From Eutreptiella sp. 'Long Island Sound 2002' (taxonomy: Eukaryota; Protista; Euglenida), in the NCBI GenBank assembly GCA_964036045.1, contig OZ038379.1:6634001-6698000 (forward strand): 64,000 nucleotides of DNA. The letters are read 5' to 3'. Below are positions 6,797-61,482 of this stretch, piece after piece (positions within the stretch are counted from its first letter, which is position 1; every line of letters begins with the position of its first letter). A program made the position numbers and the translations under genes. The notes below the pieces were generated by a model that saw only the letters and a program-made list of their open reading frames with translations, made no database searches and was not told where the DNA came from.

Positions 6797-6808
6797 TCCC
6801 TTTTTGCC

Positions 6809-7667: not shown

Positions 7668-7670
7668 CTT

Positions 7671-7698: not shown

Positions 7699-7725
7699 CT
7701 CTCAAAGCCTTCGTATTCTTTGATA

Positions 7726-41173: not shown

Positions 41174-41285
41174 CCCCCCCCCCCGCCTCCCCGCGCGCTC
41201 TCCAAGTTACCTCCTCAGCAAACGATGCCTGCACAGTACCCCGACCAAACCCTCGGGTGTCTTTGCCCGTCACACTGCTCCCTTC
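41174..41285 (-). repeat. Inverted partner of 35691-35801
   Basis: See partner; ORF-track peptides GSSVTGKDTRGFGRGTVQASFAEEV occur on opposite strands. Confidence 0.9.
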
Positions 41286-41975: not shown

Positions 41976-42047
41976 TTTTGAATTCTCGGAAAATTTTGAA
42001 TTCTCAGAAATTTTTGAATTCTCGGAAAATTTTGAATTCTCGGAAAT
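41976..42047. repeat. Tandem repeat 4 x 18 bp
   Basis: TTTTGAATTCTC(G/A)GAAA(A/T) x4, no spacers. Confidence 0.93.
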
Positions 42048-42262
42048 TTTTGGGACGAAATTCCCAAAATGCAAATTTCAAGCAACGGCTGACTATTGAG
42101 GGCCCCATAGAGAGCCGTAGACGTGGCGTTGCCGCATGCGGCAAGGGTTGTGGAGGGCGTGAGGGCGTCGCAAGGCAGTGGTGGGCGAGGGTGGACCAGG
42201 ACCCCCCGGCATGTGCCGCCGGGTTGACGAACCGCGTGGGTTGATGGCTCCACAATCCGCAG

Positions 42263-42721
42263 GGGCTCGACTTCCTGGAGGTGGGCGGGAACCTGACGGT
42301 CGCCGGGGCCGCCGCGTGGACGACGGATCCGGCCGCAGTGGAGAACTACGAGAATTTCACGGTGACGATCACCGGGTTCAACCTGAGCGCCGCCGACAAG
42401 TACGCCGTTGTCAACGCGCGGACCAGTCTCAGCGGCTGCGACCAGCCGTCGAATCCCGCCTACGTCAGTGACGCTGCCGTGGACGGTTTGTCGGTGGGCA
42501 TCCCGGGCCTCCTGGCGCTGCCGGCGGGCGTGTACCTGATCTGCTACAACACGGGGGGCATCTCCTATTTGGATTCCGCGGCGCCGTACGTGGCCGTTGG
42601 GCCGCCGCTCCGCGTCCAGGGCGTGGAGTTCTTCTCGTCCGACCCCACGCCCCCCACCGACGACGCGCCGTTCACCGTTACATTCCACGGGCTTGGGCTC
42701 AACACGACGGACCGGTACCAG
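42263..42721 (+). CDS. Giant repeat surface protein, exon 5
   Basis: Acceptor AATCCGCAG| gives CYSLQ|GLDFLEVGGNLTV; donor CAG|GTCGTC (could slip by one codon); phase 0/0. Confidence 0.8.
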
Positions 42722-44220
42722 GTCGTCCTTGGGCTGGGGTGGGCGTTGATGTGGGAGTCAGCGGCGTTTCGAGGGGGGGGCAGCGGAGGTGAAACGTTGT
42801 GCTGGGTAGGGGGGCGGGCCATTCGGGACCCGCAGATGCAGCATGTAGAGGGTGGCGGTTTGGAGACGGTTTTCTCGTGCCGATAGCACGGTGGTATGCA
42901 CGCAGTCGTCCCCCCCCCCCCCCACAACCCACACCTTCCCTGGTCTACAAACATGTCGACAGTGTCTACAATCAGCAGACCGCGTCTACTTGTATCAGGT
43001 AGTGTTTACAACCCACAGAAGGTGTGGTCATTGCCCCGCCCCCCCCCCCTCTGCACGTGCAGCCTGGCGTTGCACCAAGTACGAGCGTTGAAGTACATTC
43101 CCTTGTAAAGGTATGGTGCGGTATGCAAGAACGCTGACTATGTGTCAAAAGCCCCCCCCCTCATGCGATACATGGATGGCAGAGCACAGCGTGAATCGTG
43201 CAGAGGGTGCACGGCCAAGTGCTGGATGTGCAGCGCGCAAAGTGCAATGTGGAATGTGTGTTGTGGATGAGTGTGCCGTCGGATATGCAGAGAGTGCCAG
43301 GGTGGGTGTAGTGAACACGCTGCCGTGTGTAGAGTGCACAGGGGTGCAGTGTAGAGTGTGGAGTGCCATGTGCTGGATGTGCGGTGGGCAGTGGGCGAAG
43401 TGCAGTGCAGGGGTACAAGTGAGTGGTGTGCAGTGAGATGTGCACAGTGTGCCTTGTGGAGAACAGTGTGCAGTCGTCAAATATGTGGCGTGCAGAGCGT
43501 GAAATCGTGAGTCCAGTGCGCGGTGTGTAGTGTGCGCACTGTGGAGTGCACTGTAGTGCAAATTGCACCACCTGCCCCACCACTTGGGTCCCGGTGTTCA
43601 GTCTTGTTGAGGTCTGGGCCCCATTCCCTTCCCGGTGCGCTACCTGGCCTGGCCACTGGCGGGGGCACACACCGTGCGCTGTGCGACAAGTAGGCTATTC
43701 TGGACCCGTTTCCCCCGATGGCCAAGGTGACCGCAGTAACTACGGTGTTCCCCTACACAGGACTACTGAGATTCTTACTCAGATCAGAAAATCAGACGAC
43801 GCGTTGAAACAAATGGTGTTTCGCACTGAAAATGCCAGAATGCTGTCTGAATCTGCTGTGTTTGCCCCGTGGGCGTGGCTTCCCCAGCGGTGGGTGGCTT
43901 TCAGGGTGGTCACGCAAATGCTGACTTTCTATTGGGCGCTGTGCCCGCGCTGTGCAGAAACGACCCCCTGGATAGCAGCGCCTCTGGCGCAACGCTGCCA
44001 CCCTCAAAAGCCTGCAACAGCTCTCGACTGGTGGGCACAGTGTCGCGTGTCTGAGGGGTGTGCAATCAGAAGGTTGTTGAGGGTTGTGGAGAGGTGCCCA
44101 GGGGTGATGGAGGGGGTGTGCGAGGTCGTGGAGGGTTGGAGGGGTAAGAGGATCGACCAGGACCTTCCCTAACTTCGGAACAAAAAGCCGACATCGCACC
44201 CTCTCGCACCCTCCGCTCAG

Positions 44221-44998
44221 GTTGTGGTGGGGACCTGCGTCAACGTCACGGACGGCACCAGCACCGGCGTGAACTTGACGGACATCTCAGGGGACGGGCT
44301 GGTCACGGTAGGGCCCTTTACCCCGGGGCCGGGCTGGGCCGTGTGCTACAGCTTCAACGGGCAGGAGTACCAGGTGGTGGACTTCGGCGGGGCCGTGGGG
44401 TGGGCCTCGGACCCGAGTCCCCCGTACCCCGAGGCAGACTTCGACCTCGTCGTCACCGGCGCCAGCCTCTCGGTGCTCGACAAGTTCGCCTTCGTCCCGG
44501 GCGACGCCGTCGGCTGCGCGCCCGCGACGTCCGGCGACGCGCGGCCCTACAACCTCACCGCGCCCGATGTGGCCCCGTCCCGCGCGCGCGTGAACGTCAC
44601 CGCCGGAACGGCGCTGTCCGCCGGGATGTACACCGTGTGCTACGCCGTGGACGCGACGCGGTTCGTCTCTATCGGGCACACCTTGACGGTTGGGGGCGCG
44701 ACTGGGTTCGCCTCCACGCCCAGCTTTCCCAAGCAGTACACGGGCTTCACGCTGCGGCTGGACGGGTACCTGTTTGGCGAGGGTGACCGGTGGGCGGTGG
44801 TGCCGCAGAGCGAGGGGTGTGCAGTGGCGGCAGAGGCGCGCGCGCGCAACGTCAGCGGGGCGACGTTCGCGATGGACGCGTACAACGTCACATCGTACAC
44901 GGTGGCGGCCGACGGGCAGGACGCGGGGTACCATGACGTCTGCTACGATTTCCAGGGATCCGGGTGGCTAAAGGTGGGCACAACACTCCGCATCGACG
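44221..44998 (+). CDS. Giant repeat surface protein, exon 6
   Basis: Acceptor CTCCGCTCAG|, donor G|GTATCT, phase 0/1. Confidence 0.87.
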
Positions 44999-46490
44999 GT
45001 ATCTATTGTGTCCTCTGATGGTTCTTGTCTCCTTTTGTCCCCGTTTGTGGTTGCTTGTTGTTTTTGTCGGGTTTTACTTGTTGTTGCTTGCTGTTGCTTG
45101 GTTTTACTTTTTGTTGTTTGTTTGTTCTTGCTCTTACTTGTGGTTGTTGTTTTTTGTTACTTGTTACTCTTTGGGTGCACTATGTGGACGCATAGAGCTG
45201 TAAAGTTAGGCTGCGCGGGGGCAAAAAGTGCCATAAACGCCACAGAGATCCATTTGGCCAATGCCAAAAGAGGGGTGGTAGGCGGATTGACACAGTTCTA
45301 ACGCAAACGTTTACGGCACCATTGCCGTAAACGTTTACGGCGCCACCACCATAAAGCGGCACGGGTATTGGAGGGGAAGCTTTTAGGTAGCAGGAAGACG
45401 TGCCCCCCCCCCCCCCAGAGGAATAGAGACTACACCCCCTCTCCCTTCTCTTCATCTTTCCACAGGCAAGAACCAACATGATCAAATAATTAGGCAATGG
45501 TGTTGAGACGATGGTGTGGACAGTAACAGCCTGCCTCAGGCCGGCCAGGTCATTTCCGAGGCAGGGCAGAGATGGAGAATTTGGGGCACCTGCGTAGCCC
45601 ACTAGGTACGGGAAAGCATTTTTACAGCGCTCCCGCCGTAAAACTGTACGGTGTTGCCGCCATAAGTTTGTGTATAGGTCCTTGATTGCCGGCGCAATGG
45701 TCTCAAAAATGTCATACCGCAACAGGAAAGCACTCAGTTGCACACTCTGGATATGAATAGAATAGGGCGCTCTCAAGAAATATATAGTAATCAAAATTTA
45801 GGGCTTTGGTGAAATTGAGCTCATAGGCCATCTATTTGGCTACTTACGGTGTTGGTTAGTGGTGTTAGGCCGTACAATTTTTCCTGCGGATATTATAGAT
45901 ATTGCAGATATTGTTTTCTGCGAAAACAAATCCTGTTGATGGGCAGCATGCAGTTTTGCCAGTGGACATGCTTTTGCATGTGTGTTGGGGTGTCTAGAGA
46001 AGGTGGAGGGGGGGGGGGTAATGGGATAAAATTGTGCATTGGGTTGGCCTCAAAAGGCATCAAAATGGCACCCCGCGGTGGTAAGCGCTGCTTTGCAGCC
46101 AAGGAGCCCGTAGTGTCTGACGGCGAGATAGAGGAGATTGGTGCAACGGCCGCCCCTGCAGTGGTCAGTTAAGAACCCCGGGATGTACCCGAGGACAAGT
46201 TGAGTGATGGTGACGCCAAATTTGGTGCAGTGGGAAATGACAAAATTGAAGCGGGTGCCGTAACACCCATCTATGAGGACCCTGCCAAGCAGGATACCAT
46301 TAGAGTACACAGGACACGGGTTTTGATCCTGCACCTGCAACAGATAAGGACTTGGACTTTGATGTGACGTCAGATGTAAGAACCGGTGGGGGGGCTCATT
46401 GTGTGTAGGGGTGACCACATGGTTAGCTCTGAGAGGGGATGACTGGTAGCATAGCATTGGTATAAGTGAACCATGCAGGTTCCTTCCAAT

Positions 46491-47075
46491 TTGTCCATCT
46501 CTGCCCTTCTCCTTCAGACAGAGAAATATTTTTCAGTCCTAGTATGGGTTTTTAATCACTAGGCCAACACCGTAAGCATTTTTGCGCTGAGATGTGCCAT
46601 TGAGGGTTAATCATTACACCGAAAATTAAAAAAAATGCGAGCATTGAACGACTGTTTGGGGCACATTTGATCAATATTCCCCTCGCTGCAGTTGTCCAAT
46701 TAGGGGGACGTCTTCTGGCTTATCCGGGTCATGCAACTTATAGCTATCTGTCCTTTTGTGGATCTCTTTTACATTTCCCTGGGGGTGCCAATGACCTGTC
46801 GCAGCAATTCCGAACAAGGTCCGGATCCCGCACTATTAGTTTAAAGCGCCGCTGGAGCTGTGTTTTTCAGATACAACTCGGTACAGAGAAAATGTAAAAT
46901 TCGACCGAGATTTGTCAGTTTTTACGGTGCTAGCACCGTAAAATTTTCATGGGTCATACATTTCCGTTCCACGGGGCTAAAGCCCTGTCGTGTACTTGTT
47001 TTTAAAAAGAGTGCATTTTTTACGGCGCCCTGGGTCTGGGGGTTTACAGCTGTACGCATGCGTGTAGTGCACCCC
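46491..47075 (+). repeat. Dispersed MITE-like repeat, copy 2
   Basis: Homologous to 34707-35470. Confidence 0.75.
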
Positions 47076-48685
47076 AAGTTGCTTGTTGTTATTTGTTGCT
47101 TGTGTTGTTAGTTGTGGTTGCCCTTCATTCATATCTTTGCTTTTTGACTCAAAATAAACGCCCGGTCTATAGCCGTCTACTGAGCTGTGACTCGATTTTA
47201 CCCTTACCGTACTTTCATTGCTATGAGTAGGGGGCTGGTTTGTTGTGTGTCGCCCCCTGTGGGCTGGCCCTGCTACTGATGTGCCCGCTGCCAAACGTGA
47301 TGAAGTCCGAATCAGCCCCCCCCTCCCAAAACAAATCCGCCGAGGCCCGATTTGGTTCCAGTGCTGCCCCATATTGTGACCGCCTGCCTCTTGCTGGAAG
47401 GTCTGCACCTGCAACAATCCTGCCAAACGCCGACCCCCTTCGTGGCCATGCTCCCACCCTCCGGCAATGGATTCACAGTACTTACCCCCTCCCCCCTCAA
47501 GAGCGCGTGCCACCGCTGTTTTTCTGACCGTAGTTTTTGCGGCCAAGAGTATCCAGTGACGTGGTTGGGTGCCGATTGTGGAGAAAAAGAGGGTGGCAGT
47601 ATTTCCTGTTGATGACAGCGTTCTGTTTGACACTAAAACCCAATGCTCACGGGGGGGGGTCTGACATACTGTAGGATAGTCTGCTTTGTGATATCTATAT
47701 GAGCCCTCTATAACAGTCTTGTCAGGGTACTGCATTGTACCACAGAGAAAGGTGCCTATGGCAATGTCACTAAAGAGCTTTTTGTCCTGACCCTGCTGCT
47801 CTGCAGCCTTGTGCCTGTGTGGTAAAGGTGTGGCAAAGCATACAACATCTGCATCCCACAGCGGGGGCCCTTGGTTTCCATGCGCGACTCCCCCTGTCCC
47901 TGCCCTGGGGGCCCAGTTAGTTGCAAAGGGTGGCCGCGTTTGGCCCATAGTACTGGTGCCGCCGAAGGTGTTGGGTGACGCCGTACGTCAGGTGTCATGC
48001 TCTCCTCCACCCCATGGCGATCGTTGTAAGGTGCATATATGTTGGGGTACCCCCTCCCCCGGCCGCTGGCTAGACCCTCCCCCTCAAAGGAGCCTTCGGC
48101 CCACTTCTACTTGGGGGAGGTGAGTCGCGTATCAACCCGAGGGGTTGGCCCCCGCGTGACCCAATGCCATTCCTGGCAACCAACAGAAAAGGGATGCCAG
48201 GGATCGGAAGCAGGGATGCTCTTGTAACGATGTGATGTCGTGCATCATGGACAAGTCACTGGAACTAAATTTTGTCGGCAAGACGTCTGTATATTGTGTG
48301 GCTGCTGTGCTCATGTGAAACCTGGTCTGGATGAGGTCTGGGTAGGTTTTTGGTGTATCCATCGGATCTCAAAACACGGGTCACAGGCAAGCACCATTTT
48401 GTGTCGAAGCTCCGCCCTGTGCTACGGTCGTTTCCCCGACTCCGGCCGACCAATTGTTCAAGATCTCTATGTTTGCCGAACACCAACAGGGTTCCTTCCG
48501 GTCAGCCCCCCCCCAAATCGACGGGGTTCGCTTGGACCCAACTTATCCAAACAGACCAAACGGCCACATGCCCCCTTCCGGGGTTGTTCGCATTGTGTGG
48601 AGGGCACCTGCGCAAGGGTGTGGGAGGGACATGCCTTGCCACTGGTCTCGATGTCTCGATTCTCCTCCTCCCTCCCGTCTGGCAG

Positions 48686-49377
48686 GCGCCCTGGCATACT
48701 CACACGGCTACCCCATCGCCAACGAGGTCTTCACGCTCACCATCACGGGACTCGGCCTGTCCAACTTCGACTCCTACGCAGTCGTCCCGGAGGCCGAGGG
48801 GTGCGGCGCCCCGACGGCGGTCCCCGTCGCCGGGGTATCCGGCACAACCTCCGCGACCCTCTCCGTGTCGCGTGCCGCCGGGAGCCACGTGGTGTGCTAC
48901 CTCCTCCTGGGCGCGGCCTGGAAGCAGGTTGGCGCGCCGTTCGTCGTCAACGGGGCCTCCGACGCCTACACGACGCCGCACCCGGCGGCGCGAATGACCA
49001 ATTTCACCCTGGTGGTGTCCGGCAGCGGCTTCGACTCCGGTGACAAGGTCGCGACGGTCCCGGCCGCGATGTCCTGCTCCGCAGTGAGCCCTCTCACCGG
49101 GGGTTACCTGTCGGTTGGGCCGGACATGATCAGCCCGGACAACACCACCGTCAATGCCACGCTGGTGCAGTACGCCGCGGGCGCGTACAAGGTCTGCTAC
49201 AACGTCCAGGATCTGGGGTGGCAGCAGGTCGGGACCTACGAGTTGCAGGTCGCCGGGGTGTCGTCGCACACCACGATCGGGAGCCCTGCGGCCGCCGGGG
49301 TGCGCTTCACGTTGAACCTGCACGGCAGCTTCTTGACGGACGAGGATGTCTACGGCATCGCGACACCCGGGCAAGAG
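48686..49377 (+). CDS. Giant repeat surface protein, exon 7
   Basis: Acceptor CCCGTCTGGCAG| is phase 1, matching exon 6 (RID G|ALAYS); donor GAG|GTCTGT, phase 0. Confidence 0.87.
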
Positions 49378-49378
49378 G

Positions 49379-50867
49379 TCTGTTGAGGGCTGCAGGGAAG
49401 GGTAGCGCAGCGCTTAACACGGGGGAGCTGTGACAGTTCATTCCGCCGCAACTACTTCTGCCCGCACCCAGCGGTTTGCCAACCGAATGGTAGTCGCCAA
49501 ACCTGGGCCCACAACCGCTTTTCCAACCATTGTTAACCGCCTCCGGCACCCACTTTTGAACTCCCCCTCCAGTCCCCCACTTCCAATCCCAACAATTATG
49601 ACTGTCCTCCATTTGGAATGCCAGGGTATCTTCCGGCTGTTGTTGCTTTGCAAAATGGCGCTGCATCTGAACTGGTTGCCCCCCCCCCCCCCAAAAAGAG
49701 ACAACACACAAATACAAAAAATAGTAGCAGACACAACCTCCCAACCCAACCCAACCCACCGACAAGCAGCACGATTAACCCGACCACAAATAAATTATCC
49801 GCCACAACAACTATCCGCCGACATTTTCCAGACTCCTGTTCCGACCTTGGTGTGTGGGGCTTGATTTGTCTGGGGTATTGTGCTGTAGTTTTTGATCTTG
49901 CGTGCCGTTGCTTCTCCATGAGGGTCCTTTGGTGCTGTCATGCTTTGTGGATGGTCAGATTGGTTGAAGGGTCATTTGGGCCGTATTTGGCCGTACTGCC
50001 CTCTACGGTGCCCCGCTGGCGCAAATTCCTCTATGGTCCACCCAAGGTGAGCACAACCCCCTCTATGGTGCCCCTACAGTGAGCACATTCCCTCTATGGC
50101 CTCGTGTAGTGATCACTCCCCTCATGGCCACTCAAGAGGGGGCAGACACTCTGAAATGGCGCCCCTTCAGTGAGCACAACCCCCTGCTATGGCCCCCCTG
50201 CAGTGAGGAGAAGCGCCTGTATGGCCCTCCAGGCGGCCCAACAGGACAACAAACAGGGCCCCTCGGTGCTAGCCATGAGGCAAGGGCGGGTGTAAGGCTC
50301 GGGGTGTACGTGGGTGGATTGGAGGGAGAGAAGGAGCGGGAGACCAGGAGGCAGCCCCGAGGGACGCCGCCCCCCTCCCTCCAGATGACGGTAGGCAGGT
50401 CTTCTTGTCCAAAGTAAGGGAAAACTCTCCATCAAAATTGCATCTGCAATGTGCCCCAGAAACGCATGTCAACCATATACATGCCTCCAGCAACAAGCAG
50501 CCCCTTCGTCCATGAAAAATCCGACGGCCAGTCCCTATCCTCTGTCCTGCACCTCATTGCGCCGTGCTCCTGTTCCCAAACAAAACTCCTGCCCCCCCAC
50601 CCGCCATCCATCTGTCAATACCCGCTTTTGCAACCGCTCTTGAAACCGCCTTCATGCCCCTGCTGTGCCCTTGCAGTGCGACAACGTGACGATGGTGGCA
50701 GTTTCTGCCGGTTGGGTGTCGGGTGGTGGCGCGCTGGTGGCAGTGCCGGAGCAGCAGCTGGACGCCACTGGGACGTACACCGTGTGCTACAACTTCCGCG
50801 GCCTGGGTCTGCTGTCCATCACTGACCTGGTGGTGGTGAGCGGGGCGGTGGCCTTCCGGACCGTTGG
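49379..50867 (+). repeat. 1.49-kb direct duplication, left copy (intron 7 from +2 plus first 191 nt of exon 8)
   Basis: Matches 59287-60777 with 4 substitutions and 2 homopolymer indels seen. Confidence 0.95.
50677..50867 (+). pseudogene. Truncated duplicate of exon 8 (5' part), cut by the retrotransposon
   Basis: CDNVT...AFRTVG then runs into element sequence and stops at 50998-51000. Confidence 0.85.
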
Positions 50868-52213
50868 ATGTATGCAGCGCCACTACTGCAACCCACGCAA
50901 ATCACCGCACTGCCCAGGGGAACCCCATCTACGTCTATCACCCCACAGCAATCGCCCGCCTACCCATACCCAGCGACACCGACATCATCTACTTCACTGA
51001 CGCATCCGGCACCCAGCAACCCACCCCCACGGTCGGTTGCGCCTCCGTGCGCATCACCCGGCACGCGGACGGCCTCCACGTGGAACACCACACCGGGGCC
51101 ACCATCTTTGGGGCGTCCTCCCACGGCGAACTGCGCACCATGGCAGACGCCGTCACCGCCACACCGCCACCCACGACGATCCGGCCCCGCAACATCTGGG
51201 TAGTCGTGGACGCCACGGTCGACATCCACCTCACCAGGCGCCTTGCGGACCTGCCCCTCCACAAAGCACTCGAATCCGGCCTCACCACACAAGCGTTGGG
51301 ACTATGGATGGCCTTCAAGGGCATGCACCCCCAGGACACCCTACACATCATCAAGCAGGAGTCACACCGCTACGCATACGGCAATGGACGCGCAGACACG
51401 CAGGCCAAACACCAGAACACCAACCACACCCCAGGGCTCGAACGCGTGCGACTGGACACCCCACACCACAGCCACCTGCAGCACCTGCCCCCGATACCCC
51501 CGGCCACACAGCCCCCCCAATGGATGCCCGAGGACACGCCGTACACGGATCGAGACAAGCAGTACCACTACCCCACACCCATCCAGCAACTGGCCACCAC
51601 ACTGGGCCACCCAGCGAACACCGAACTCCTCCGACGCCTCGAAGACTCCGTCCACACCCCCCTCTACTACTCCGCCCTGCGCCCGGATAGCCTCCCAGCA
51701 CACCTACAAAAGCCCCGACTCCAACTCGCCCTCGAACAACTTCCCCTCCTCACCCGATACCACCGATGGTATACGCGCCGCTCGATCCACGTCCCCGCAG
51801 GACACACCAAATGCATCTGCAGCCACGCGGAAGAAGAAACATGGGACCACTTCAAGGCGTGCCCCCTGTACAGAGGACTGGGCACCCTCACAGACTGGAA
51901 CCCAACCCACACCATCGCACAGCACGCCGGATGGCTGACGCAGTCCCCGGCGACCCAGCAACTCACCACCGTCGTCAAGCAGACGGAGGTGCTCGAGGCA
52001 GTCCGCAGGGGACTCGTCCCCACTGCCGTCTACACCTTGCTACGCACCCACGCGGAGGACCCCCAGGCCACGGCGGCGCACATGCAGCGGACGGCCGTTG
52101 CCAAGACGGCGGAGCAGCTCACATACCGCACCCACAAATACCTGCAGCATGCGGCAACCCTGCCCCCAACAGACCGAGCCCACCTCCTCAAACTCCTGTT
52201 CTACCAACCATGA
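50864..52213 (+). CDS. C-terminal part of a LINE pol: RNase H plus Zn finger
   Basis: IIYFTDASG (D), SSHGELRTM (E), WVVVDATVD (D), ESHRYAYGNGRADTQAK (H...N..AD); CICSHAEEETWDHFKACP (CxC-x9-H-x3-C). Confidence 0.85.
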   Translation: MDVCSATTATHANHRTAQGNPIYVYHPTAIARLPIPSDTDIIYFTDASGTQQPTPTVGCASVRITRHADGLHVEHHTGATIFGASSHGELRTMADAVTATPPPTTIRPRNIWVVVDATVDIHLTRRLADLPLHKALESGLTTQALGLWMAFKGMHPQDTLHIIKQESHRYAYGNGRADTQAKHQNTNHTPGLERVRLDTPHHSHLQHLPPIPPATQPPQWMPEDTPYTDRDKQYHYPTPIQQLATTLGHPANTELLRRLEDSVHTPLYYSALRPDSLPAHLQKPRLQLALEQLPLLTRYHRWYTRRSIHVPAGHTKCICSHAEEETWDHFKACPLYRGLGTLTDWNPTHTIAQHAGWLTQSPATQQLTTVVKQTEVLEAVRRGLVPTAVYTLLRTHAEDPQATAAHMQRTAVAKTAEQLTYRTHKYLQHAATLPPTDRAHLLKLLFYQP

Positions 52214-52228
52214 GAACCTACCCCGTGA

Positions 52229-54805
52229 CATACCAACACGGAACCCCCACCACGTCTACACACCATCCACCGAGCACAGCACTGGCACAACACACACGGA
52301 CGCCACAGGCACCGCACACACTCCCACCAGCATGCGCGCGCCACCAGCCCCCATCCCCCCACGCCGCCGTCCGTCCACAGGTACCACCAACCACCAGCCA
52401 CCGCATGTCCCCTCTGCGTTAGCCGGCGGCTACCACAGACAGCCCTGCCCTGCAACCCAGACCACTGGGTCTGCCTGGGAGCCGCGCACCGCCTCACCCG
52501 CTGCCCCCACTGCGGGGACCTCAACCCCCGCCACCACGGGCGGCCCGCGGCCCCAGCCGCACCCCACCCCGCCAGCCACCCCAGCTTCTTCGGGTTCCTC
52601 ACCGACACCCTCCGGGACCACCTGGGAGGGTACTACGTGGCGGACGCGGCGGACCACGCATGGACCATAGCCGTGGCCACGGGCAGCACACCCCTGCCCC
52701 CCCACAGCCCACCCCTACGCCACAGCGGAGGCGGCTTGAACGTGGCGGCCCGCCACATCCTCCTCGCCCTATACCTCCACCACCGAGACCTACACCTCCC
52801 AGGCCCACAACTCCCGGCCCCCCAAGCAGCAGCCCTGACGCCGGAAGCGTGGGCCGACACGGCACCAGAGGAGATAGCAGCCTACCTCCGAATCACTTGC
52901 CGCCGGTTCAAAAACGCCCTCGGCCGACGGAAGGGAACACCTTACCCCCTCAGCGCACTCCTCTACCCGGCACACCACCCCCACCCCGCACAACAGACGC
53001 CCCTGGAGGGCTGGGCGTCTTTTCGGGACGCCCACCTGGCCGCCCCCGACGAGGCCACCGCCACGCGGATGGGCCTCACGGACCAGGAAACCTACGTCAG
53101 AGGCCTCAAGACGAGCCTCCAAGAGGCACACCGCTGGCACGCCCGCTCCCCGTCGCCCCCACAGGGACAGGGGGGTTCACCCGCCCCCGACACCCACCAG
53201 GCCAAGAAGCCCAAGACAGGTCAGGGGGCCCGCCAACGCGCCCACCAGCAGGGCGCGACGCCCCGACCAAGGCCCGGGTCCAGCCACACCGCACCACCCC
53301 ACGCCCAGACCCCCGGGGCACACCAACAACACCGCCACCGCCAGCGCCCACCACCACCACCGTACCGCAGCACCCAAACCCTGCAGCCCAGTCAGCCACC
53401 ACCGCCCACACACGTCCACACCATGCCAGGACCACCATACGCGCAGAGCCAGGGGACATGGCACCACCAACACCACCACCACGCCCCCGTCCCTCCCAAC
53501 CCCTACCCCCTAATGCCCCCAAGCTACAGCGACCCCCACCAGCTACATCCCCACCACGCCCCAGCACAACCAGGCCCCGCGAACCACCCACCCCACATAG
53601 CGCACATCACCGCACCACACCATCACGTATTCCACCACCACCAGCCCCTGCCACCACACCCACCAACGCCGGGGTACCACACACAACCGGCACACCCTCC
53701 ACACCACCACCACGCGGTCCAGCACCACCCGCCGCCCCCGCTACACGGGCCCACGACATACGAGCCACGGTACACCCCCATGGACCCGCGAGGAGCCGCG
53801 CACGCACACCAGCAACACCAGGGCCTAGTAGGAGCGCCCCACCACCACCAACAGCCCCCCCACCCACACCCCATACCAGCGAGCACCATCCACCAGCAGC
53901 CACCCATCACATACGGACCACAGCCCCACCCGGGGGCTCATGCGGCCGCCTCCCACCCGCACCCCGGCACCACAACCAGTCAAGAACCGCAAGGGCCACA
54001 CGGCGCACACACGCAACACCCACACGACCCACAGGGACGCCCGGACCCCCAGCCGGCACAACACCCACCCCCGCCCCCCCCACCCCACCACCACCAGCAG
54101 CCCCCCCACCCACACCCCATACCAGCGAGCACCATCCACCAGCAGCCACCCATTACATACGGACCACAGCCCCACCCGGACGCTCATGCGGCCGCCTCCC
54201 ACCCACACCCCGGCACCACAACCAGTCAAGAACCGCAAGGGCCGCACGGCGCACACACGCAACACCCACACAACCCACAGGGACGCCCAGACCCCCAGCC
54301 AGCACAACACCCACCCCCGCCCCCCCCACCACCAACAGCGCCACCCCCACACCACCCCCCCCCCGCCCCCCCCCCCGAGACCAGGCCACGGACACAACAC
54401 GCGGCAGCCAGCACCAGCCAATCGACGTCGATACCCCCGCCGACACACGCCACCGCGAATCCCCCCTCCCGCGACCGCCACAAGAGACCCCATCACCGGA
54501 CCCCACGCGCGACAACGATGACCACCCCCCCCAACCCACACCACCCCCCCCATCACACCCCGCACCACCAGTCGCCGCACCGGCCGAACCCTACGCCCTA
54601 CACAACCCCGCAGCGGTACGGCAGCACCTCCGGGGACTCGGGGAACAGGACGTCGTGCTGTACCTCCGCACCTCCGGCACCAGCACCCCCATCCGGGCGG
54701 CCACCCTGGTCCAGGCGGCCACCCTGGGGGAAGGCGTCAGAGACTTCCTCTTCGACGCCTTCCTCCACGTCGCCCGACACGAGCGCCCCCCGCGCGCCAC
54801 CCTAG
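52229..54805 (+). CDS. Element ORF: RING-like Cys motif, helical segment, His/Pro/Gln-rich region with an 82-aa duplication
   Basis: Stop-free frame 52229-54805, start codon unclear; CPLC-x11-C-NPD-H-WV-C...CPHC at 52406-52513; 246-bp repeat ~53840-54330. Confidence 0.55.
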   Translation, partial: HTNTEPPPRLHTIHRAQHWHNTHGRHRHRTHSHQHARATSPHPPTPPSVHRYHQPPATACPLCVSRRLPQTALPCNPDHWVCLGAAHRLTRCPHCGDLNPRHHGRPAAPAAPHPASHPSFFGFLTDTLRDHLGGYYVADAADHAWTIAVATGSTPLPPHSPPLRHSGGGLNVAARHILLALYLHHRDLHLPGPQLPAPQAAALTPEAWADTAPEEIAAYLRITCRRFKNALGRRKGTPYPLSALLYPAHHPHPAQQTPLEGWASFRDAHLAAPDEATATRMGLTDQETYVRGLKTSLQEAHRWHARSPSPPQGQGGSPAPDTHQAKKPKTGQGARQRAHQQGATPRPRPGSSHTAPPHAQTPGAHQQHRHRQRPPPPPYRSTQTLQPSQPPPPTHVHTMPGPPYAQSQGTWHHQHHHHAPVPPNPYPLMPPSYSDPHQLHPHHAPAQPGPANHPPHIAHITAPHHHVFHHHQPLPPHPPTPGYHTQPAHPPHHHHAVQHHPPPPLHGPTTYEPRYTPMDPRGAAHAHQQHQGLVGAPHHHQQPPHPHPIPASTIHQQPPITYGPQPHPGAHAAASHPHPGTTTSQEPQGPHGAHTQHPHDPQGRPDPQPAQHPPPPPPPHHHQQPPHPHPIPASTIHQQPPITYGPQPHPDAHAAASHPHPGTTTSQEPQGPHGAHTQHPHNPQGRPDPQPAQHPPPPPPPPTAPPPHHPPPAPPPETRPRTQHAAASTSQSTSIPPPTHATANPPSRDRHKRPHHRTPRATTMTTPPNPHHPPHHTPHHQSPHRPNPTPYTTPQRYGSTSGDSGNRTSCCTSAPPAPAPPSGRPPWSRRPPWGKASETSSSTPSSTSPDTSAPRAPP

Positions 54806-55680
54806 ACGGCGAGAGCCCGCCCCCCACGGGGAGCCGGATCTGGGTGCCCCCCATCGACTGGGGGCGACACCTGGTCGGACACCCCGTGCCGGGGCGGGTG
54901 GGCACCAAGGGCCGCACCCGCTACCACGAGCCCGACATGGCCCACCCCCCACCCGACGCCACCCCCGACAGCACCAAAGAGTGGGAGCGGGAAACATGGG
55001 TAGCCCGGATGGCCTCCCTGAGCAACTTCCGGCACCGCGTCCCGGGGGACATCCCCACCCCCGACGAGCAGCAGCCAGCCCCCTCCACGTACATGACCCT
55101 CATGTACAATCTGCACTACACCCTCTCCACCACCACCTACGACGCACCCACAGACCACTGGGTGGTACACGGCACCGACTCCCTCCTCCCCGCCGACTAC
55201 ACCCCCCCCCCACACAACCCAGGCCCCGACACGTACGCCAGGGGGGACGACCCGGACGACCCCCACATCTGGGGCACGTGGGAACCCAAATCCCTGGACA
55301 CGCTGCTCTCCATCCGCAGCGGCTACCAGGGCCTTGGTAGGGCGATGTATTGCCTCGCCAAGTGGACCCAACGGACCTGGGGGATCCCCACGGACCGATG
55401 GGTGTGGGTGGTCACGCTGCGCCCCCAGCAGAGGGAAGCCCCCCCAAACCGCAGGGGACCCACCCCCCCACGCCCCACCACCCTACAACTATGCCCGTAC
55501 ATGGTGGCAGCCCGCCTCATGACGCTGCTGTGGACGGGCCCCCACACCCCCACCCAAAACTACCCCCACCTCACAGAGGAGGACATGCCCGGCATCCAGC
55601 GATGCTTCTTCCAGACCCTCGACTACCTCCAGCAAACACACCCGCACGTCCTAGAGCAGATATGGCCACCCCCCGGGTAA
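54571..55680 (+). CDS. Ulp1/C48-like cysteine protease domain (putative)
   Basis: GVRDFLFDAFL, YNLHYTL (His 55114), HGTDSLL (Asp 55177), PQQ (55426), QLCPY (Cys 55492), HLTEEDMPGIQR. The Gln-Cys spacing is atypically long. Confidence 0.55.
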   Translation, partial: VAAPAEPYALHNPAAVRQHLRGLGEQDVVLYLRTSGTSTPIRAATLVQAATLGEGVRDFLFDAFLHVARHERPPRATLDGESPPPTGSRIWVPPIDWGRHLVGHPVPGRVGTKGRTRYHEPDMAHPPPDATPDSTKEWERETWVARMASLSNFRHRVPGDIPTPDEQQPAPSTYMTLMYNLHYTLSTTTYDAPTDHWVVHGTDSLLPADYTPPPHNPGPDTYARGDDPDDPHIWGTWEPKSLDTLLSIRSGYQGLGRAMYCLAKWTQRTWGIPTDRWVWVVTLRPQQREAPPNRRGPTPPRPTTLQLCPYMVAARLMTLLWTGPHTPTQNYPHLTEEDMPGIQRCFFQTLDYLQQTHPHVLEQIWPPPG

Positions 55681-56424
55681 CCCACGTGCCCGCGCAGCCG
55701 AGACAACGCCGCCACGCCAGCACCAGCACGCACGGATCACCAGGGAAAACGCGCGCACACGCCCGATGCCCGAACCTGCACCCTCGTTCTCGCTACTTAC
55801 AGGACCCAGCATCATACGCCCGCCCCCGAGGCCCAGGACCCTCCGCCGTCTCCCACAGCCCTCTCCTCCGCCTCCGACTCCACAACCTCCACCACCACGA
55901 CCACCTCATCCACCACCACCACCACGTCCTCATCCAGCACTCCACCCCCCAGGCCGCGGGGGACACCTCCCAAACGGGCCTCCAAACCCGCCCCCACCGC
56001 GAGCAGCCCCGCCGCCGCCAAGGCCCACGCCCCGACGAAGCCCACACCCACGACCCAGCCGACGCCCAAGACCGCCGCCAAACGGCCACCCAAACCCAAG
56101 GGTCAACCCGCAGCCAAGCCCAAACCCAAGCCCAAACCTGGCGCCACGACGGCAGCGCGAGCCCGGCCCCCCGAGGACGTCCTCTACGACATCCGGCCCC
56201 AGCCGTCCCAGGCCTGAAGGCAGCAGCGCCCAGCGCGGCGCCCCCCCACCGTCACCGACGCCACCGCCACCACCTTCATGGCGGAGCGCGCCGCGGCCGA
56301 AGCGTGACGCACCTCGTCCCGCCACCTCTCAAAGCCCGCACCCCAGGCCCACGGACCGCTCCCGACCAAGCCAGAACAACGCCAGGGTCCACTAGCAGCG
56401 TCCCCGCCCCCCTACCGGCCCTCG

Positions 56425-57123
56425 ATGACAGCCCACATGCAACGCATGCCCCACTACCGCCGCCGCCGCGAATCCCCGCCCAACCCCGAGGCGGAGACCG
56501 TACGCGCACACCCGCGGGTCCACATCCGCGTGCACCCCCACTCCCCACGCACCCCCACGGAACAGGACTACGAGGAATCCCCCAGGCCCGCCACCGCCGC
56601 CGGTCCCCACGACCACGTCACACCCACCCACGCCCACTCCTCCGCCCAAGACCGCAGGCCCGCCCAGGAACAGTGGTGGCAGCGCTGGACCCACACGCAG
56701 CTCTGGGAGCTGCGGAAGTGGGCCCGGGGAGAGCCCTCCCTCGAGGGCCTGGTCCATCGGCCCCGCAAGGGGTCGGTGGAGAACTGCCGCCTCCGGCCGG
56801 CGGGGGGGTGGATGCCGCAGGCCGCATGGGAAGCCATGCTGGCCGATGCGCTCCACCCCCTGGGAGTCCACCCCCGCAACCTCCCCGCGCCCCAGGACCA
56901 CCCGTATGTCCTCAGGCGCCTGCGGGAGACCCTCCAGGAAACGCAGCGAGACGGCATCCGCCTGTGGGACATCACCCAAAGCCCAGCCCCGCACGCACAC
57001 ACCCCCTCACCACCCCACAAGCGTCGGCGCACCGACACCGGCGACACCCACAGCACCCCAGGAGCCCTGCGCGCCACACAACACGACGCGCCTGACCCCC
57101 CGGCCAGCGGCGCCGCCATCTAA
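56425..57123 (+). CDS. Orphan element ORF (232 aa), unknown function
   Basis: ATG-initiated; globular-looking Trp-rich core (QEQWWQRWTHTQLWELRKWARG...) in the element's sense direction. Confidence 0.4.
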   Translation: MTAHMQRMPHYRRRRESPPNPEAETVRAHPRVHIRVHPHSPRTPTEQDYEESPRPATAAGPHDHVTPTHAHSSAQDRRPAQEQWWQRWTHTQLWELRKWARGEPSLEGLVHRPRKGSVENCRLRPAGGWMPQAAWEAMLADALHPLGVHPRNLPAPQDHPYVLRRLRETLQETQRDGIRLWDITQSPAPHAHTPSPPHKRRRTDTGDTHSTPGALRATQHDAPDPPASGAAI

Positions 57124-57850
57124 CCCCGTTACCCAGCAAACCACCACCACGGGGCGCCACGCCAGGCCCCGCCCAGAAGTCACCAAACGAACCGGACGCC
57201 GAAGGAAGCCAACACACACGACAACGAGCACCACTACGCCCAAAGACGCCGAACCCAGGCCCGCTACCGTGGGCTCCTCTCCACCCTCAGCACGACACAC
57301 ACGTCGCTGGCGTCACTCCTCCGCCGTGCCCCCTCCCACGCCACCGCCCCGCCCCCCCCCCCTCCCGCCGCACGTCCCCACGCCGCCCAGCACCCAGCCC
57401 CACACACTGCGCCACAGCATCGCCCTAGTCCGGCTCCTCCACCATCGCGCCACTTGGCACCTCACAGTAGACCGCCGTCCTGTGGTCCCGCTCCCCCCGG
57501 CACCGCTCCCGGGGCCGCACCCGGCCCACGTCGTGTTCGCCCCCACGTCGCGGGCCGCGGACATCCTCCCGCTCCTCGCCGCCACCCCTCCCGGGCATCG
57601 CATACTGCTTGCCGCCAACCCCTCGGTCCTCAGTGAGGTCCTCATCGGGCACGCCGACGCCCTGCACGTGCGCCCGCTGCTGCCCAACCTGCACGCTGCG
57701 TACGCCCCCGGCACGCCCGTCGACCCCTCCGTGTGGGACTCCCAGTGAGGCCACCGGCCACCGGCCGGCCCGCACGCACCACCCCGCACTCGCCTCGGGC
57801 GCACGACCCCGTGGACGCCGCTACCCACACGCCCGGCCCCGCGCAACCGC

Positions 57851-58710
57851 CTAACCGAGCCAGAACCCAAGCACAAATCAAACCCGAGCCACACCCCAAA
57901 ACCGCTAACCCTTGACTCCTAACCAAGCCCGCCGAGGGAACACCGAAACCACAGCCCACACCCACAGCCCACACAGCCGCCTAACCAGCCAGCTCCAGAA
58001 GCAAAGAGACACCTCACCAAACCCACCCTGACCCAAGCCTAACCGAGCCGAAGCCCCAACACAAATCAAACCCGAGCCACACCCCGAAACCGTCAACCCT
58101 TGACTCCAAACCAGGCCCGCTGAGGGAAATACGTAGACACAGCCCACAGCCACAGCCCACACAGCCGCCTAACCAGCCAGCACCAGAAGCAAAGAGACAC
58201 CTAACCAAACCCACCCTGACCCATACCCGTGTACATCAGGACACGCGAGCCGCACCCCTGGGGCGCGACCGCCGCCACAGCACCGACGACACACGCCAGA
58301 GGACACAACGCTATTGCACCGCCGCACCAACTGCCCGTGCCTGTGCCTACAGTGTACGCGCGCCCCTGTTTTTCTCTTTTTTGTTTTTTCTTTTTTTTCC
58401 CCAAAAAAAAAAAAACAAGTAAAAAAAAAAAAAACAAGTAAAAAAAAAAAAAACAAAAAAAAAAAAAAAAAACGAAAATTAGGGGGGGAGGAAGAGGGAC
58501 ACAACCACCCATGGCACACGCGCACCGCACACAGCACGCACACCGGTGAACAGGAGCCCAGTGGCCCAGGACACCGCACATGCAACACAACACACCGAGC
58601 GAGCACACCGGTGAACAGGAGCCAGCTGGCCCAGGACACCGCAGACGCACCACAGCAAACCGCGCGGGCACACCGGTGAACAGGAGCCCAGCGGCCCAGG
58701 ACACTGCACA
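57851..58710. repeat. Element 3'-region repeats: 2 x ~188 bp (57851-58222), T-run/A-run segment (58369-58475), 3 x 65 bp (58541-58710)
   Basis: CTAACCGAGCC...CCCTTGACTCC twice; CACCGGTGAACAGGAGCC at 58541, 58606, 58671. Confidence 0.85.
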
Positions 58711-59286
58711 CACGTAGGGCGGCCGAGGGACAGGAAAGAACCAATACCCCATGGGTCGGACGCACTGGGGCGACCCAGCCGACCCACCGGGCCAGTGGCA
58801 GGAGCGGTACTCCAAGGCCACTGGTCCGAGCCCGGCCAGGCTGCATCGGGGACCATGGCAAACGTCACCCGGAGCCATGGAAGCAACCGGTGACAGGCGA
58901 GCCGGTACACAGTCCAGGAGGGGGTCACCTGCCAAGCAGAGTGGCCCCGCAACTCAAGCCACAAGGGTGAGGCGGACGTACCGTAGACAAGCGGGAGCAA
59001 TACCCCTTGTGGTGAGAGATACTCCACACGGCTGGGCAGCCCCCCAGAGCTGCCGCCCAAAGGAGGGGGCATGTGGCCCTACCCATGGACACATGTGGGG
59101 ACACCCTCCCACCTGGGCACATGGACCGGGTGGCGGCGACAATGCCTTCCCAAGCACATGCGGGAGCGGCTCAAGAGGCACCTGACATAGGGCAGTGGGA
59201 GGGACAGGACGTCCCCTTGGTAAGACCTTCTTCCTGCAATGTCAAAGGAGGCATCCCGAGCTCCCGAAGATACCTACCTACCTACC

Positions 59287-60777
59287 TCTGTTGAGGGCTG
59301 CAGGGAAGGGTAGCGCAGCGCTTAACACGGGGGAGCTGTGACAGTTCATTCCGCCGCAACTACTTCTGCCCGCACCCAACGGTTTGCCAACCGAATGGTA
59401 GTCGCCAAACCTGGGCCCACAACCGCTTTTCCAACCATTGTTAACCGCCTCCGGCACCCACTTTTGAACTCCCCCTCCAGTCCCCCACTTCCAATCCCAA
59501 CAATTATGACTGTCCTCCATTTGGGATGCCAGGGTATCTTCCGGCTGTTGTTGCTTTGCAAAATGGCGCTGCATCTGAACTGGTTGCCCCCCCCCCCCCC
59601 CAAAAAAGAGACAACACACAAATACAAAAAATAGTAGCAGACACAACCTCCCAACCCAACCCAACCCACCGACAAGCAGCACGATTAACCCGACCACAAA
59701 TAAATTATCCGCCACAACAACTATCCGCCGACATTTTCCAGACTCCTGTTCCGACCTTGGTGTGTGGGGCTTGATTTGTCTGGGGTATTGTGCTGTAGTT
59801 TTTGATCTTGCGTGTCGTTGCTTCTCCATGAGGGTCCTTTGGTGCTGTCATGCTTTGTGGATGGTCAGATTGGTTGAAGGGTCATTTGGGCCGTATTTGG
59901 CCGTACTGCCCTCTACGGTGCCCCGCTGGCGCAAATTCCTCTATGGTCCACCCAAGGTGAGCACAACCCCCTCTATGGTGCCCCTACAGTGAGCACATTC
60001 CCTCTATGGCCTCGTGTAGTGATCACTCCCCTCATGGCCACTCAAGAGGGGGCAGACACTCTGAAATGGCGCCCCTTCAGTGAGCACAACCCCCTGCTAT
60101 GGCCCCCCTGCAGTGAGGAGAAGCGCCTGTATGGCCCTCCAGGCGGCCCAACAGGACAACAAACAGGGCCCCTCGGTGCTAGCCATGAGGCAAGGGCGGG
60201 TGTAAGGCTCGGGGTGTACGTGGGTGGATTGGAGGGAGAGAAGGAGCGGGAGACCAGGAGGCAGCCCCGAGGGACGCCGCCCCCCTCCCTCCAGATGACG
60301 GTAGGCAGGTCTTCTTGTCCAAAGTAAGGAAAAACTCTCCATCAAAATTGCATCTGCAATGTGCCCCAGAAACGCATGTCAACCATATACATGCCTCCAG
60401 CAACAAGCAGCCCCTTCGTCCATGAAAAATCCGACGGCCAGTCCCTATCCTCTGTCCTGCACCTCATTGCGCCGTGCTCCTGTTCCCAAACAAAACTCCT
60501 GCCCCCCCACCCGCCATCCATCTGTCAATACCCGCTTTTGCAACCGCTCTTGAAACCGCCTTCATGCCCCTGCTGTGCCCTTGCAGTGCGACAACGTGAC
60601 GATGGTGGCAGTTTCTGCCGGTTGGGTGTCGGGTGGTGGCGCGCTGGTGGCAGTGCCGGAGCAGCAGCTGGACGCCACTGGGACGTACACCGTGTGCTAC
60701 AACTTCCGCGGCCTGGGTCTGCTGTCCATCACTGACCTGGTGGTGGTGAGCGGGGCGGTGGCCTTCCGGACCGTTGG
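59287..60777 (+). repeat. 1.49-kb direct duplication, right copy (continues into the intact exon 8)
   Basis: See left copy. Confidence 0.95.
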
Positions 60778-61015
60778 GTCGTTGGGGCAGTACCAGTCGT
60801 TCTCGCTGATCGTGGATGGCGCGGGGCTGTCAACGGCCGACAGATACGCCCTCGTGGCCAACGCCACGGCGGACTGCTTTGAGCTCACCGACCTGGGGAC
60901 GCTGATCCTGGCCGGGCAGTTGGCGGGCAGCACCCAAGTCAATATCCCAACGTTGCAGATGGGCGCTGGGCTTTACAGGGTTTGTTACCAGCTGGGGACC
61001 AATGTGGCGCGGCAG
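60587..61015 (+). CDS. Giant repeat surface protein, exon 8 (intact copy)
   Basis: Acceptor CCCTTGCAG|, donor CAG|GTACCC, phase 0/0; TPGQE|CDNVT is continuous with exon 7. Confidence 0.85.
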
Positions 61016-61482
61016 GTACCCCCCCCCCCCCGAAACTGCACCCGTGTGCCCTGTATCCCCTTTGCATGCCCCGTATACCCATGTGTGTGTGTGTGTGTGC
61101 CGCAGCCGGAGGGGAGCTTAAATGACATTTCACATTGTCCTTCACAGGCCCTTGGCTTAGCGCTCAGCGCGGCTGCCGAGGGCTGGAGACGGTCGGGATC
61201 GGGTGCAGGATGTGCCTCTTCCTCCCTGTACTGCAGAAAGGCGCCTAGTCCCTGATGGTCATGTCTGTTCTTTGACTATTTGCGGCCTGACGAGGATCTA
61301 CTTACGACCAGTGCCTGTGCCTGTCCTGTTCTTGCTGGTTCTGGGCTTTGGTCGCTTTGCGTCATCCGCGTGTGTGTGTGCCCTGTATTCCCCCCCTGTA
61401 CACCCTGTCCCTCCTGTATGCCCGGTGTTCCCCGTGCTCGCTCTGTATATCACCACAGCCCCACATTCATCGCATGCTTCAG

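What the first reader, a model, noticed from the sequence alone, without database searches (positions are those of the whole stretch)
49378..60777. LINE insertion with a 1.49-kb flanking duplication that begins at nucleotide +2 of the intron and may rescue the gene
Seen: 49379-50867 recurs at 59287-60777 (4 substitutions, 2 homopolymer indels) around a 5'-truncated element whose (TACC)4 tail abuts the second copy. The duplicated segment starts at the T of the GT donor of intron 7 and ends mid-exon 8. The gene therefore has a proximal dead-end acceptor (50677, stop at 51000) and a distal intact exon 8 (60587). Known: LINE TSDs are usually ~7-20 bp; much longer ones are rare. Inference: either a giant TSD, or RNA-templated duplication in which RT primed in exon 8 copied the host intron-exon splicing intermediate to its 5' end and then jumped to the LINE 3' tail. 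The second model would explain the start at the splice donor. Acceptor choice could switch between a full-length and a truncated secreted protein.
Basis: partly seen in the sequence, partly recalled or inferred. Interest (0 to 1): 0.75.

Follow-up and report, generated by a model that had tools for sequence, protein, structure and literature searches.

The report
Kilobase target duplication by a LINE
A jumping gene (LINE) that landed in a gene of a large protist genome duplicated 1.5 kb of its landing site. This is the extreme end of a habit of this LINE family, not a DNA copy of a splicing intermediate, and the whole locus was later copied at least 17 times.

Summary
Window 49379-50867 recurs at 59287-60777 (4 substitutions, 2 homopolymer bases). 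The two copies abut the 5'-truncated start and the (TACC)4 tail of an 8.4-kb APE-type LINE. The left breakpoint is at the G|T of a well-supported splice donor.

The best reading is a giant target-site duplication (TSD) made during insertion. The lariat-RNA model is not supported. This family has at least 5,212 intact 3' ends in the genome. In 14 randomly sampled copies with both junctions resolved, TSDs are 10-14 bp (6), 17-27 bp (3), 47, 133, about 225, about 436 and 583 bp. The 1,489 bp is therefore the tail of a broad distribution.

None of the four other TSDs of 100 bp or more starts at a GT. In 28 of 31 independent copies the flank starts with T right after the tail, and TCTG is an enriched start. 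Ours starts TCTG, so the donor T is an ordinary nick site for this element.

The whole structure occurs in 17 complete and 5 partial near-identical copies, and the assembly holds no empty paralogue. The "rescue" by distal splicing cannot be tested here.

The scan had already noted a 1.15-kb TSD (another LINE) and a 95-bp TSD (this tail) elsewhere in this genome.

The parts
48686..49377 (+). The acceptor AG is at 48684-48685.
   Evidence: Open frame and repeat motif. No Pfam family. The nearest atlas cluster is a hypothetical protein, commonest in Euglenozoa.
49378..49379 (+). GT donor of intron 7. The first-strand nick site lies between G and T.
   Evidence: The frame closes at the TGA 49384-49386.
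49379..50867 (+). Duplicate copy 1: intron 7 from +2, plus the first 191 nt of exon 8.
50677..50867 (+). Exon 8 fragment behind the proximal acceptor (AG 50675-50676). Reading on into the LINE stops at 50998-51000.
50868..50870 (+). 3-nt filler (ATG) at the 5' junction, found in neither the host nor the LINE.
   Evidence: Comparison with the independent copy L042.
50871..59270 (+). Body of the 5'-truncated LINE. It starts between the RT and the RNase H-like region of ORF2 and is followed by about 7 kb of C/A-rich sequence.
   Evidence: Family members carry RVT_1 and Exo_endo_phos.
50984..51412 (+). RNase H-like motif series (DASG .. E .. D .. H .. GN.AD) in the LINE ORF.
   Evidence: Motifs read. 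Not confirmed by Pfam or PDB sequence search.
51803..51871 (+). Cys/His knuckle (C.C..H...C) near the end of the LINE ORF.
   Evidence: motif only
53837..54328 (+). Internal tandem repeat of the LINE, 246 nt x 2.
57849..58223 (+). Internal tandem repeat of the LINE, 188 nt x 2.
58523..58717 (+). Internal 65-nt repeat x 3. Other copies expand it to about 20 units.
59271..59286 (+). (TACC)4 3' tail of the LINE.
   Evidence: The tail has 3-6 units in 32 copies, most often 4.
59287..60777 (+). Duplicate copy 2: intron 7 from +2, running on into intact exon 8.
60587..61015 (+). Intact exon 8 (acceptor AG 60585-60586, next donor GT 61016-61017).

Best explanation
An APE-type LINE with a (TACC)n tail inserted by target-primed reverse transcription. 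Its endonuclease nicked the bottom strand opposite G|T at 49378/49379. This is an ordinary site for the family, because the target T pairs with the U of the UACC tail. Reverse transcription stopped inside ORF2, giving the 5' truncation.

The top strand was broken 1,489 nt downstream, inside exon 8, instead of the usual 12-14 nt. The cDNA end was joined there with 3 filler nucleotides, and both single-stranded stretches were filled in. This duplicated intron 7 (minus its G) and the first 191 nt of exon 8.

Shown: the anatomy, the family's nick-site rule and the family's broad TSD range. Inferred: the order of the cuts and the nature of the distant top-strand break. After the insertion, a large block holding the gene and the insertion was amplified to at least 17 complete and 5 partial copies.
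For: 1. Both ends of the duplication abut the element's ends exactly, with no short TSD inside.

2. The insert is a LINE. It has a constant 3' end with (TACC)3-6 and variable 5' truncation in more than 30 copies. L042 shows RT motifs and RVT_1. P0026 has RVT_1 at 59.6 bits and Exo_endo_phos at 29.3 bits, both above the curated cut-offs. The genome holds 5,212 intact 3' ends.

3. TSDs of 14 randomly sampled resolved copies are 10-13, 12, 12-14, 12-16, 14, 14, 17-21, 27, 27, 47, 133, about 225, about 436 and 583 bp. Seven of 14 exceed 20 bp, against 1 of 25 for ZfL2-2 in PMC2666801 (Fisher P=0.0014).

4. Twenty-eight of 31 independent flanks start with T (P about 1e-16). TCTG is enriched as a start: 3 of 28 against a background of 1.6% (P=0.01). 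Ours starts TCTG.

5. Only one difference between copy 1 and copy 2 (49471) is shared across most amplified copies, and two copy-2 sequences still carry the copy-1 base. The two copies were therefore probably identical at birth.

6. Precedent exists. One ZfL2-2 insertion had a 1,228-bp TSD (PMC2666801). Extremely long TSDs are reported with 5'-truncated L1 in HeLa cells (PMC2912911). L1-made tandem duplications are described in PMC7058536.
Against: No empty site exists in the assembly, so the pre-insertion state is inferred.

The left breakpoint coincides with a splice donor. That has a chance of about 0.15% per genic insertion: 4 donors among 2,708 T in 12.3 kb. With more than 5,000 copies and a scan that selects oddities, a few such cases are expected, but this is a rough estimate.

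The TSD sample is small. It is also biased against long TSDs, because only 2.9-6.5 kb upstream was fetched. Seven further copies stayed unresolved.
Confidence: 0.8

Rival explanations
1. RNA-templated duplication. The bottom strand was nicked in exon 8 at 50867/50868. RT copied the nascent lariat-exon 8 intermediate back to its 5' end (intron +2), then jumped to the 3' tail of a LINE RNA and copied that.
For: It explains why the duplicate begins at intron +2. The final structure is compatible with it, and the gene and the LINE have the same orientation.
Against: Four other long TSDs of the family start after C or T, never after G.

The nick this model needs is G|G, whereas 28 of 31 family nicks precede T. 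The observed left breakpoint is a favoured TCTG site.

There is no substitution or deletion within about 250 nt upstream of the acceptor, where a branch point would lie. The start at +2 rather than +1 is not a specific prediction of this model. I found no precedent for RT starting on a splicing intermediate and then switching to a LINE tail.
Confidence: 0.06
2. Two independent same-orientation insertions of the family, one at 49378/9 and one at 50867/8 on different alleles or paralogues. Unequal homologous recombination between the two elements then duplicated the stretch between them.
For: It would give exactly this structure. The family is abundant and the locus is multi-copy.
Against: At one copy per roughly 440 kb, two hits within 1.5 kb in the same orientation are unlikely. 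No parental single-insertion copy is among the 22 loci. Long TSDs recur at four unrelated single-copy sites, so a one-step origin is the simpler reading.
Confidence: 0.05
3. Assembly or haplotype-join artefact that wrongly repeats 1.5 kb around the element.
For: This is a repeat-rich 2.28-Gb assembly with many unplaced contigs. C1045 and C763 are identical to this locus and may be redundant contigs.
Against: The same pair of junctions is assembled 17 times. The loci differ by SNPs, and two carry a 3.6-kb longer insert. Independent loci show the same kind of structure.
Confidence: 0.02

Closest known systems
Long TSD (L-TSD) of the zebrafish LINE ZfL2-2 in chicken DT40 cells (Suzuki et al. 2009, PMC2666801)
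   Same: A LINE insertion flanked by a kilobase direct duplication of the target (1,228 bp there, 1,489 bp here). It is explained by second-strand cleavage far downstream of the first nick.
   Different: There it was 1 of 25 insertions in wild-type cells. Here 7 of 14 sampled copies have TSDs over 20 bp and 4 of 14 have 100 bp or more. The host and LINE family differ, and this tail is (TACC)n.
Extremely long TSDs with 5'-truncated human L1 in HeLa assays (Gilbert et al., as cited in PMC2912911), and L1-made tandem duplications in tumours (PMC7058536, Fig. 7b)
   Same: A 5'-truncated element, filler or microhomology at the 5' junction, and a direct duplication bounded by the element's two ends with an endonuclease-type site at the 3' junction.
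   Different: These are somatic or cell-culture events regarded as aberrant. The tumour cases are megabase-scale and are explained by invasion of a sister chromatid. Here the event is germline-fixed, lies inside a gene, and was later amplified.
U6/L1 and other L1 chimeric retrocopies made by template switching or RNA ligation (PMC6789731, PMC13174262)
   Same: This is the only documented way that host RNA sequence becomes joined to LINE sequence in one insertion.
   Different: In those chimeras the host RNA lies 5' of the LINE part and carries RNA hallmarks. Here the host segment keeps its intron, lies on both sides, and is best explained as DNA.
ingi/L1Tc LINEs of trypanosomatids (from my own knowledge, not tested here)
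   Same: Euglenozoan APE-RT-RNase H LINEs with TSDs of about 12 bp, matching the mode seen here.
   Different: They have poly(A) tails. No phylogeny was made, so membership is open.

Membership tests
Non-LTR retrotransposon (LINE), APE type | Reverse transcriptase of LINE type in full or longer copies | tested here: met
   L042 frame 5937-9998 carries motifs PGVDGLP, KKGD..NWRPI, SGVPQG and CADD. RVT_1 scores E=6.7e-6 in L042 and 59.6 bits in P0026, against a cut-off of 29.6. The window's own copy is truncated downstream of the RT.
Non-LTR retrotransposon (LINE), APE type | Apurinic-like endonuclease domain upstream of the RT | tested here: met
   P0026 (96% identical to L042 over the RT) has Exo_endo_phos at 29.3 bits, against a cut-off of 24.5.
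Non-LTR retrotransposon (LINE), APE type | Constant 3' end with a simple-repeat tail, variable 5' truncation, no terminal repeats | tested here: met
   (TACC)3-6 in 32 copies. The 5' ends map to element positions from about 2200 to 8243. No inverted repeats.
Non-LTR retrotransposon (LINE), APE type | Target-site duplications at independent insertions | tested here: met
   14 resolved copies, 10 to 583 bp.
LINE-made long TSD / tandem duplication | Direct duplication whose inner ends coincide exactly with the element's 5' end and 3' tail, with no short TSD inside | tested here: met
LINE-made long TSD / tandem duplication | The 3' junction lies at a site typical of the element's endonuclease and priming | tested here: met
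   T after the tail in 28 of 31 independent copies. TCTG is enriched and is present here.
LINE-made long TSD / tandem duplication | An empty site showing a single copy of the duplicated segment | tested here: not met
   All 17 exon 7|intron junctions are followed by the LINE junction, and there is no intact paralogue in the assembly. Other strains or reads could not be searched.
RNA-templated (splicing-intermediate) duplication | The duplicate begins at the 5' end of an RNA species | tested here: met
   It begins at intron +2. This is the coincidence that prompted the model.
RNA-templated (splicing-intermediate) duplication | The required nick (50867/50868) fits the element's cleavage preference | tested here: not met
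   The nick would be G|G, and only 3 of 31 family nicks precede a non-T.
RNA-templated (splicing-intermediate) duplication | Recurrence: other long duplications of the family start at intron 5' ends | tested here: not met
   L045, L047, L067 and L071 start after C or T, not after G.
RNA-templated (splicing-intermediate) duplication | RNA hallmark in the copy, such as a branch-site scar | tested here: not met
   No difference between the copies in the last roughly 250 nt of the intron. This is weak evidence, because read-through need not leave a scar.

The most novel reading that the evidence does not exclude
This euglenid LINE family routinely uncouples the second-strand break from the first nick. 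About half of its insertions duplicate more than 20 bp and about 30% duplicate 100 bp to 1.5 kb. With more than 5,000 young copies, it would then be a systematic natural source of small tandem segmental duplications, including exon and intron duplications inside genes. It would also be a natural system for studying how LINE integration is completed.
Probability: 0.5. Interest if true: 0.55.

Novelty: new member of a known kind. Interest (0 to 1): 0.4.

Why it matters
Kilobase TSDs are known as rare accidents of L1 and ZfL2-2 in cultured cells. Here a germline example sits inside a gene, and the family behind it seems to make long duplications often.

If a full census confirms this, the family offers thousands of natural integration products for one of the least understood steps of LINE retrotransposition: second-strand cleavage and 5' joining. 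It would also be a concrete route by which LINEs create tandem duplications in a 2.3-Gb protist genome.

The result also removes an attractive but unsupported claim, that a splicing intermediate was reverse-transcribed into the genome.

Tried and rejected
1. Pfam scans of eight ORFs of the window's element found nothing at E<0.01. Relaxed scans and PDB sequence searches of the RNase H-like part and of the downstream ORF also found nothing significant. RNase H therefore rests on motifs only. The RING/Ulp1 idea of note s1-206660 got no support from these scans.

2. The host protein has no Pfam family. The word search with exon 7 returned only an unspliced genomic ORF, P0001, ending in PGQEVC. 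That gives no transcript evidence for either acceptor.

4. I searched for an empty paralogue with junction 30-mers and found none.

5. I used 3' flanks as genome queries to find distant TSD partners of unresolved copies. The flanks of L049, L040, L057 and L060 are themselves repeats with 124 to 1,370 candidates, so this was uninformative. L060 has a 286-bp match at 92% identity lying 434 nt from the element, which I left unresolved.

6. L040 and L058 share another 5' module, so their apparent 5' ends are not junctions.

8. Exons were handled one by one, by reference.

9. The large representative search, structure prediction and fold search were not used, because no claim here rests on them.
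Full report
**Observation.**
The repeat finder and a global alignment confirm that window 49379-50867 recurs at 59287-60777. The copies differ by four substitutions (49471, 49617, 49905, 50420) and by one extra C and one extra A in a C14/A5 run. Reading the sequence shows the order of parts:
- exon 7 ends at 49377;
- GT follows at 49378-49379;
- copy 1 runs to 50867;
- foreign sequence runs from 50868 to the (TACC)4 at 59271-59286;
- copy 2 starts at 59287 and continues without a break into the rest of exon 8.

The donor call is sound. The exon 7 frame closes at a TGA six bases into the intron. The acceptor AG is at 50675-50676. The junction E|C restores the spacing 'D.Y..V......C' that eleven other repeats of the same protein show. 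The product of the proximal acceptor runs 44 codons into the element and stops at 50998-51000. The distal exon 8 (60587-61015) is intact.

**What the insert is.**
None of its ORFs matches Pfam, because the copy starts downstream of the reverse transcriptase. An independent copy (L042) shows one frame holding the end of an AP-endonuclease, the RT motifs including CADD, and then the same RNase H-like segment with which the window's copy begins. A family member, P0026, scores above the curated cut-offs for both RVT_1 and Exo_endo_phos. More than thirty copies share the 3' end and a (TACC)3-6 tail but are truncated at different 5' points. This is an APE-type LINE. An exact 28-mer of the 3' end plus three tail units occurs 5,212 times with at most one mismatch. 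Compared with L042, the first three bases of the insert (ATG, 50868-50870) are filler, and the templated part starts at 50871. RNase H rests on motifs only.

**The locus is multi-copy.**
The 1.49-kb segment and the element's 3' end recur together many times. Exact 30-mers give these counts:

| Junction | Places in the assembly |
|---|---|
| exon 7 \| intron | 17 |
| exon 8 fragment \| LINE 5' end | 17 (the same loci) |
| continuous exon 8 | 21 |

That makes 17 complete and 5 partial copies, on C2 at 6.68-7.33 Mb and 10.9-12.27 Mb in both orientations, and on unplaced contigs. No copy lacks the insertion. Among these copies only the difference at 49471 separates copy 1 from copy 2 in most loci, and two copy-2 sequences still carry the copy-1 base. 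The other three substitutions are private to this locus and to two identical contigs. The duplication was therefore probably error-free at birth, and the amplification followed soon after. This also makes a local assembly artefact very unlikely.

**How the family usually inserts.**
I fetched 39 independent copies chosen by BLAST rank or by position in a list, not by structure. Fourteen had both junctions resolved:

| TSD length (bp) | Copy |
|---|---|
| 10-13 | L069 |
| 12 | L031 |
| 12-14 | L032 |
| 12-16 | L063 |
| 14 | L037 |
| 14 | L053 |
| 17-21 | L056 |
| 27 | L055 |
| 27 | L068 |
| 47 | L074 |
| 133 | L067 |
| about 225 | L045 |
| about 436 | L071 |
| 583 | L047 |

The four long ones are single pairs whose inner ends coincide with the element's ends. 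They are not tandem-array mimics: no further repeats appear in the flanks. Seven of 14 exceed 20 bp and four of 14 reach 100 bp or more (95% interval 8-58%). By comparison, 1 of 25 ZfL2-2 insertions in wild-type DT40 cells exceeded 20 bp (PMC2666801), giving Fisher P = 0.0014. The sample is small, and it is biased against long TSDs because little upstream sequence could be fetched. Seven copies stayed unresolved. The 1,489-bp duplication is thus the far tail of a broad distribution, not an isolated oddity.

**The nick site.**
In 28 of 31 independent copies the base after the tail is T (P about 1e-16). In 7 of 7 resolved cases checked, this T is also in the upstream TSD copy, so it belongs to the target and can pair with the U of the UACC tail. 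L045 even shows six bases of target-tail homology. TCTG is an enriched start: 3 of 28 against a background of 1.6% (P = 0.01). The window's duplication starts TCTG. The T of the GT donor is therefore a normal, even favoured, nick site.

**Weighing the lariat model.**
In its favour is only the coincidence with the donor. By my count this has a chance of about 0.15% per genic insertion: about 4 donors among 2,708 T in 12.3 kb of this gene. With more than 5,000 copies, a few such cases are expected somewhere in the genome, and a scan picks them out. This last step is a rough inference.

Several points count against it:
- The other four long duplications start after C or T, not after G.
- The nick that the model needs lies at G|G, against the T rule.
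- There is no change near a plausible branch site.
- A start at +2 rather than +1 is not specifically predicted.
- I found no precedent. Known LINE chimeras have the host RNA on the 5' side (PMC6789731, PMC13174262).

I put this model at about 6%. Recombination between two separate insertions would give the same structure. It needs two hits within 1.5 kb and leaves no parental copy among 22 loci, while four unrelated sites show the same outcome, so I put it at about 5%.

**Mechanism.**
[quoted passage not shown] Kilobase TSDs and L1-bounded tandem duplications are documented (PMC2666801, PMC2912911, PMC7058536). The TSD ends in this family show no common sequence on my reading. The distant break therefore seems not to be made with the specificity of the first nick. 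Whether it is a host-made break, a replication-linked end or loose cutting by the element is not shown.

**Rescue.**
Because copy 2 lacks the G of the donor, the only donor is at 49378. Splicing to 60586 would restore the normal message, and splicing to 50676 would give a truncated product. Both acceptors have identical branch and pyrimidine regions. I have no RNA data. All 17 complete gene copies carry the insertion, so any function the gene has would depend on distal splicing, but nothing here shows that it has one. The joined exon 7 + exon 8 protein was deliberately not searched. Exons were handled singly, by reference.

**Context from the scan (AI notes, mostly unchecked).**
The genome is called a euglenid, Eutreptiella (s1-219481). 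My only independent hint is an atlas cluster commonest in Euglenozoa. A 1.15-kb TSD around another LINE (s1-195238) and a 95-bp TSD with a (TACC)4 tail (s1-219637) were noted elsewhere in this genome. A similar intron-copy idea was rejected at another locus (s1-219492). These agree with my reading but were not re-tested. Nothing here looked human.

**Verdict.**
The giant-TSD reading is supported. The lariat reading is not supported. The rescue is untested. The event itself is a new member of a known kind. The family-wide tendency to make long TSDs is the part worth following up.

Noticed in passing
G000 C2:6.68-7.33 Mb and 10.9-12.27 Mb; contigs C523, C763, C912, C1045, C1065, C1132, C1953, C2256: The host gene with its LINE and duplication is amplified to 17 complete and 5 partial near-identical copies. 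Three same-orientation copies lie about 157 kb apart (6683364, 6841430, 6998100). Two loci have a 3.6-kb longer insert (15.0 kb between junctions instead of 11.4 kb).
   Followed up: partly
G000 C2:7320868-7333090: Two partial copies face each other head to head, with the LINE 3' ends at 7322375(-) and 7331583(+). This is an inverted duplication whose centre lies inside the LINE.
   Followed up: no
L047+L051 (C6:21.84 Mb), also L055, L060, L062, L067: The element's internal 65-nt repeat (window 58523-58717, 3 units) is expanded to about 20 units in some copies, and several copies are truncated inside it.
   Followed up: partly
L040:2650-2712 and L058:920-985: Two copies carry the same unrelated sequence joined to the LINE at element positions about 5863 and 5767. 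This may be a chimeric or non-autonomous subfamily with another 5' module, or a recurrent nested insertion.
   Followed up: no
L042:427-3774: An intact-looking Ty3/gypsy chromovirus pol (RVT_1, RNase H, integrase, chromodomain) lies just upstream of a LINE copy.
   Followed up: no
L063 (C1:38.28 Mb): This LINE copy sits in a tandem repeat of about 420 bp. Such sites can mimic long TSDs and must be excluded in any census.
   Followed up: partly
window 52229-57750: About 7 kb of C/A-rich, proline-coding sequence lies downstream of the LINE ORF and holds long open frames of 1,006 and 581 aa with no Pfam or PDB match.
   Followed up: partly
window 38573-49377 and 60587-61015: The host protein is a long array of roughly 100-aa repeats (G.GLS..D.[YF]A.VP....C ... 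G.Y.VCY) with many N-x-S/T sites and no Pfam family. The atlas neighbours are hypothetical proteins of Euglenozoa and Perkinsozoa, with one weak TIG-domain cluster.
   Followed up: partly
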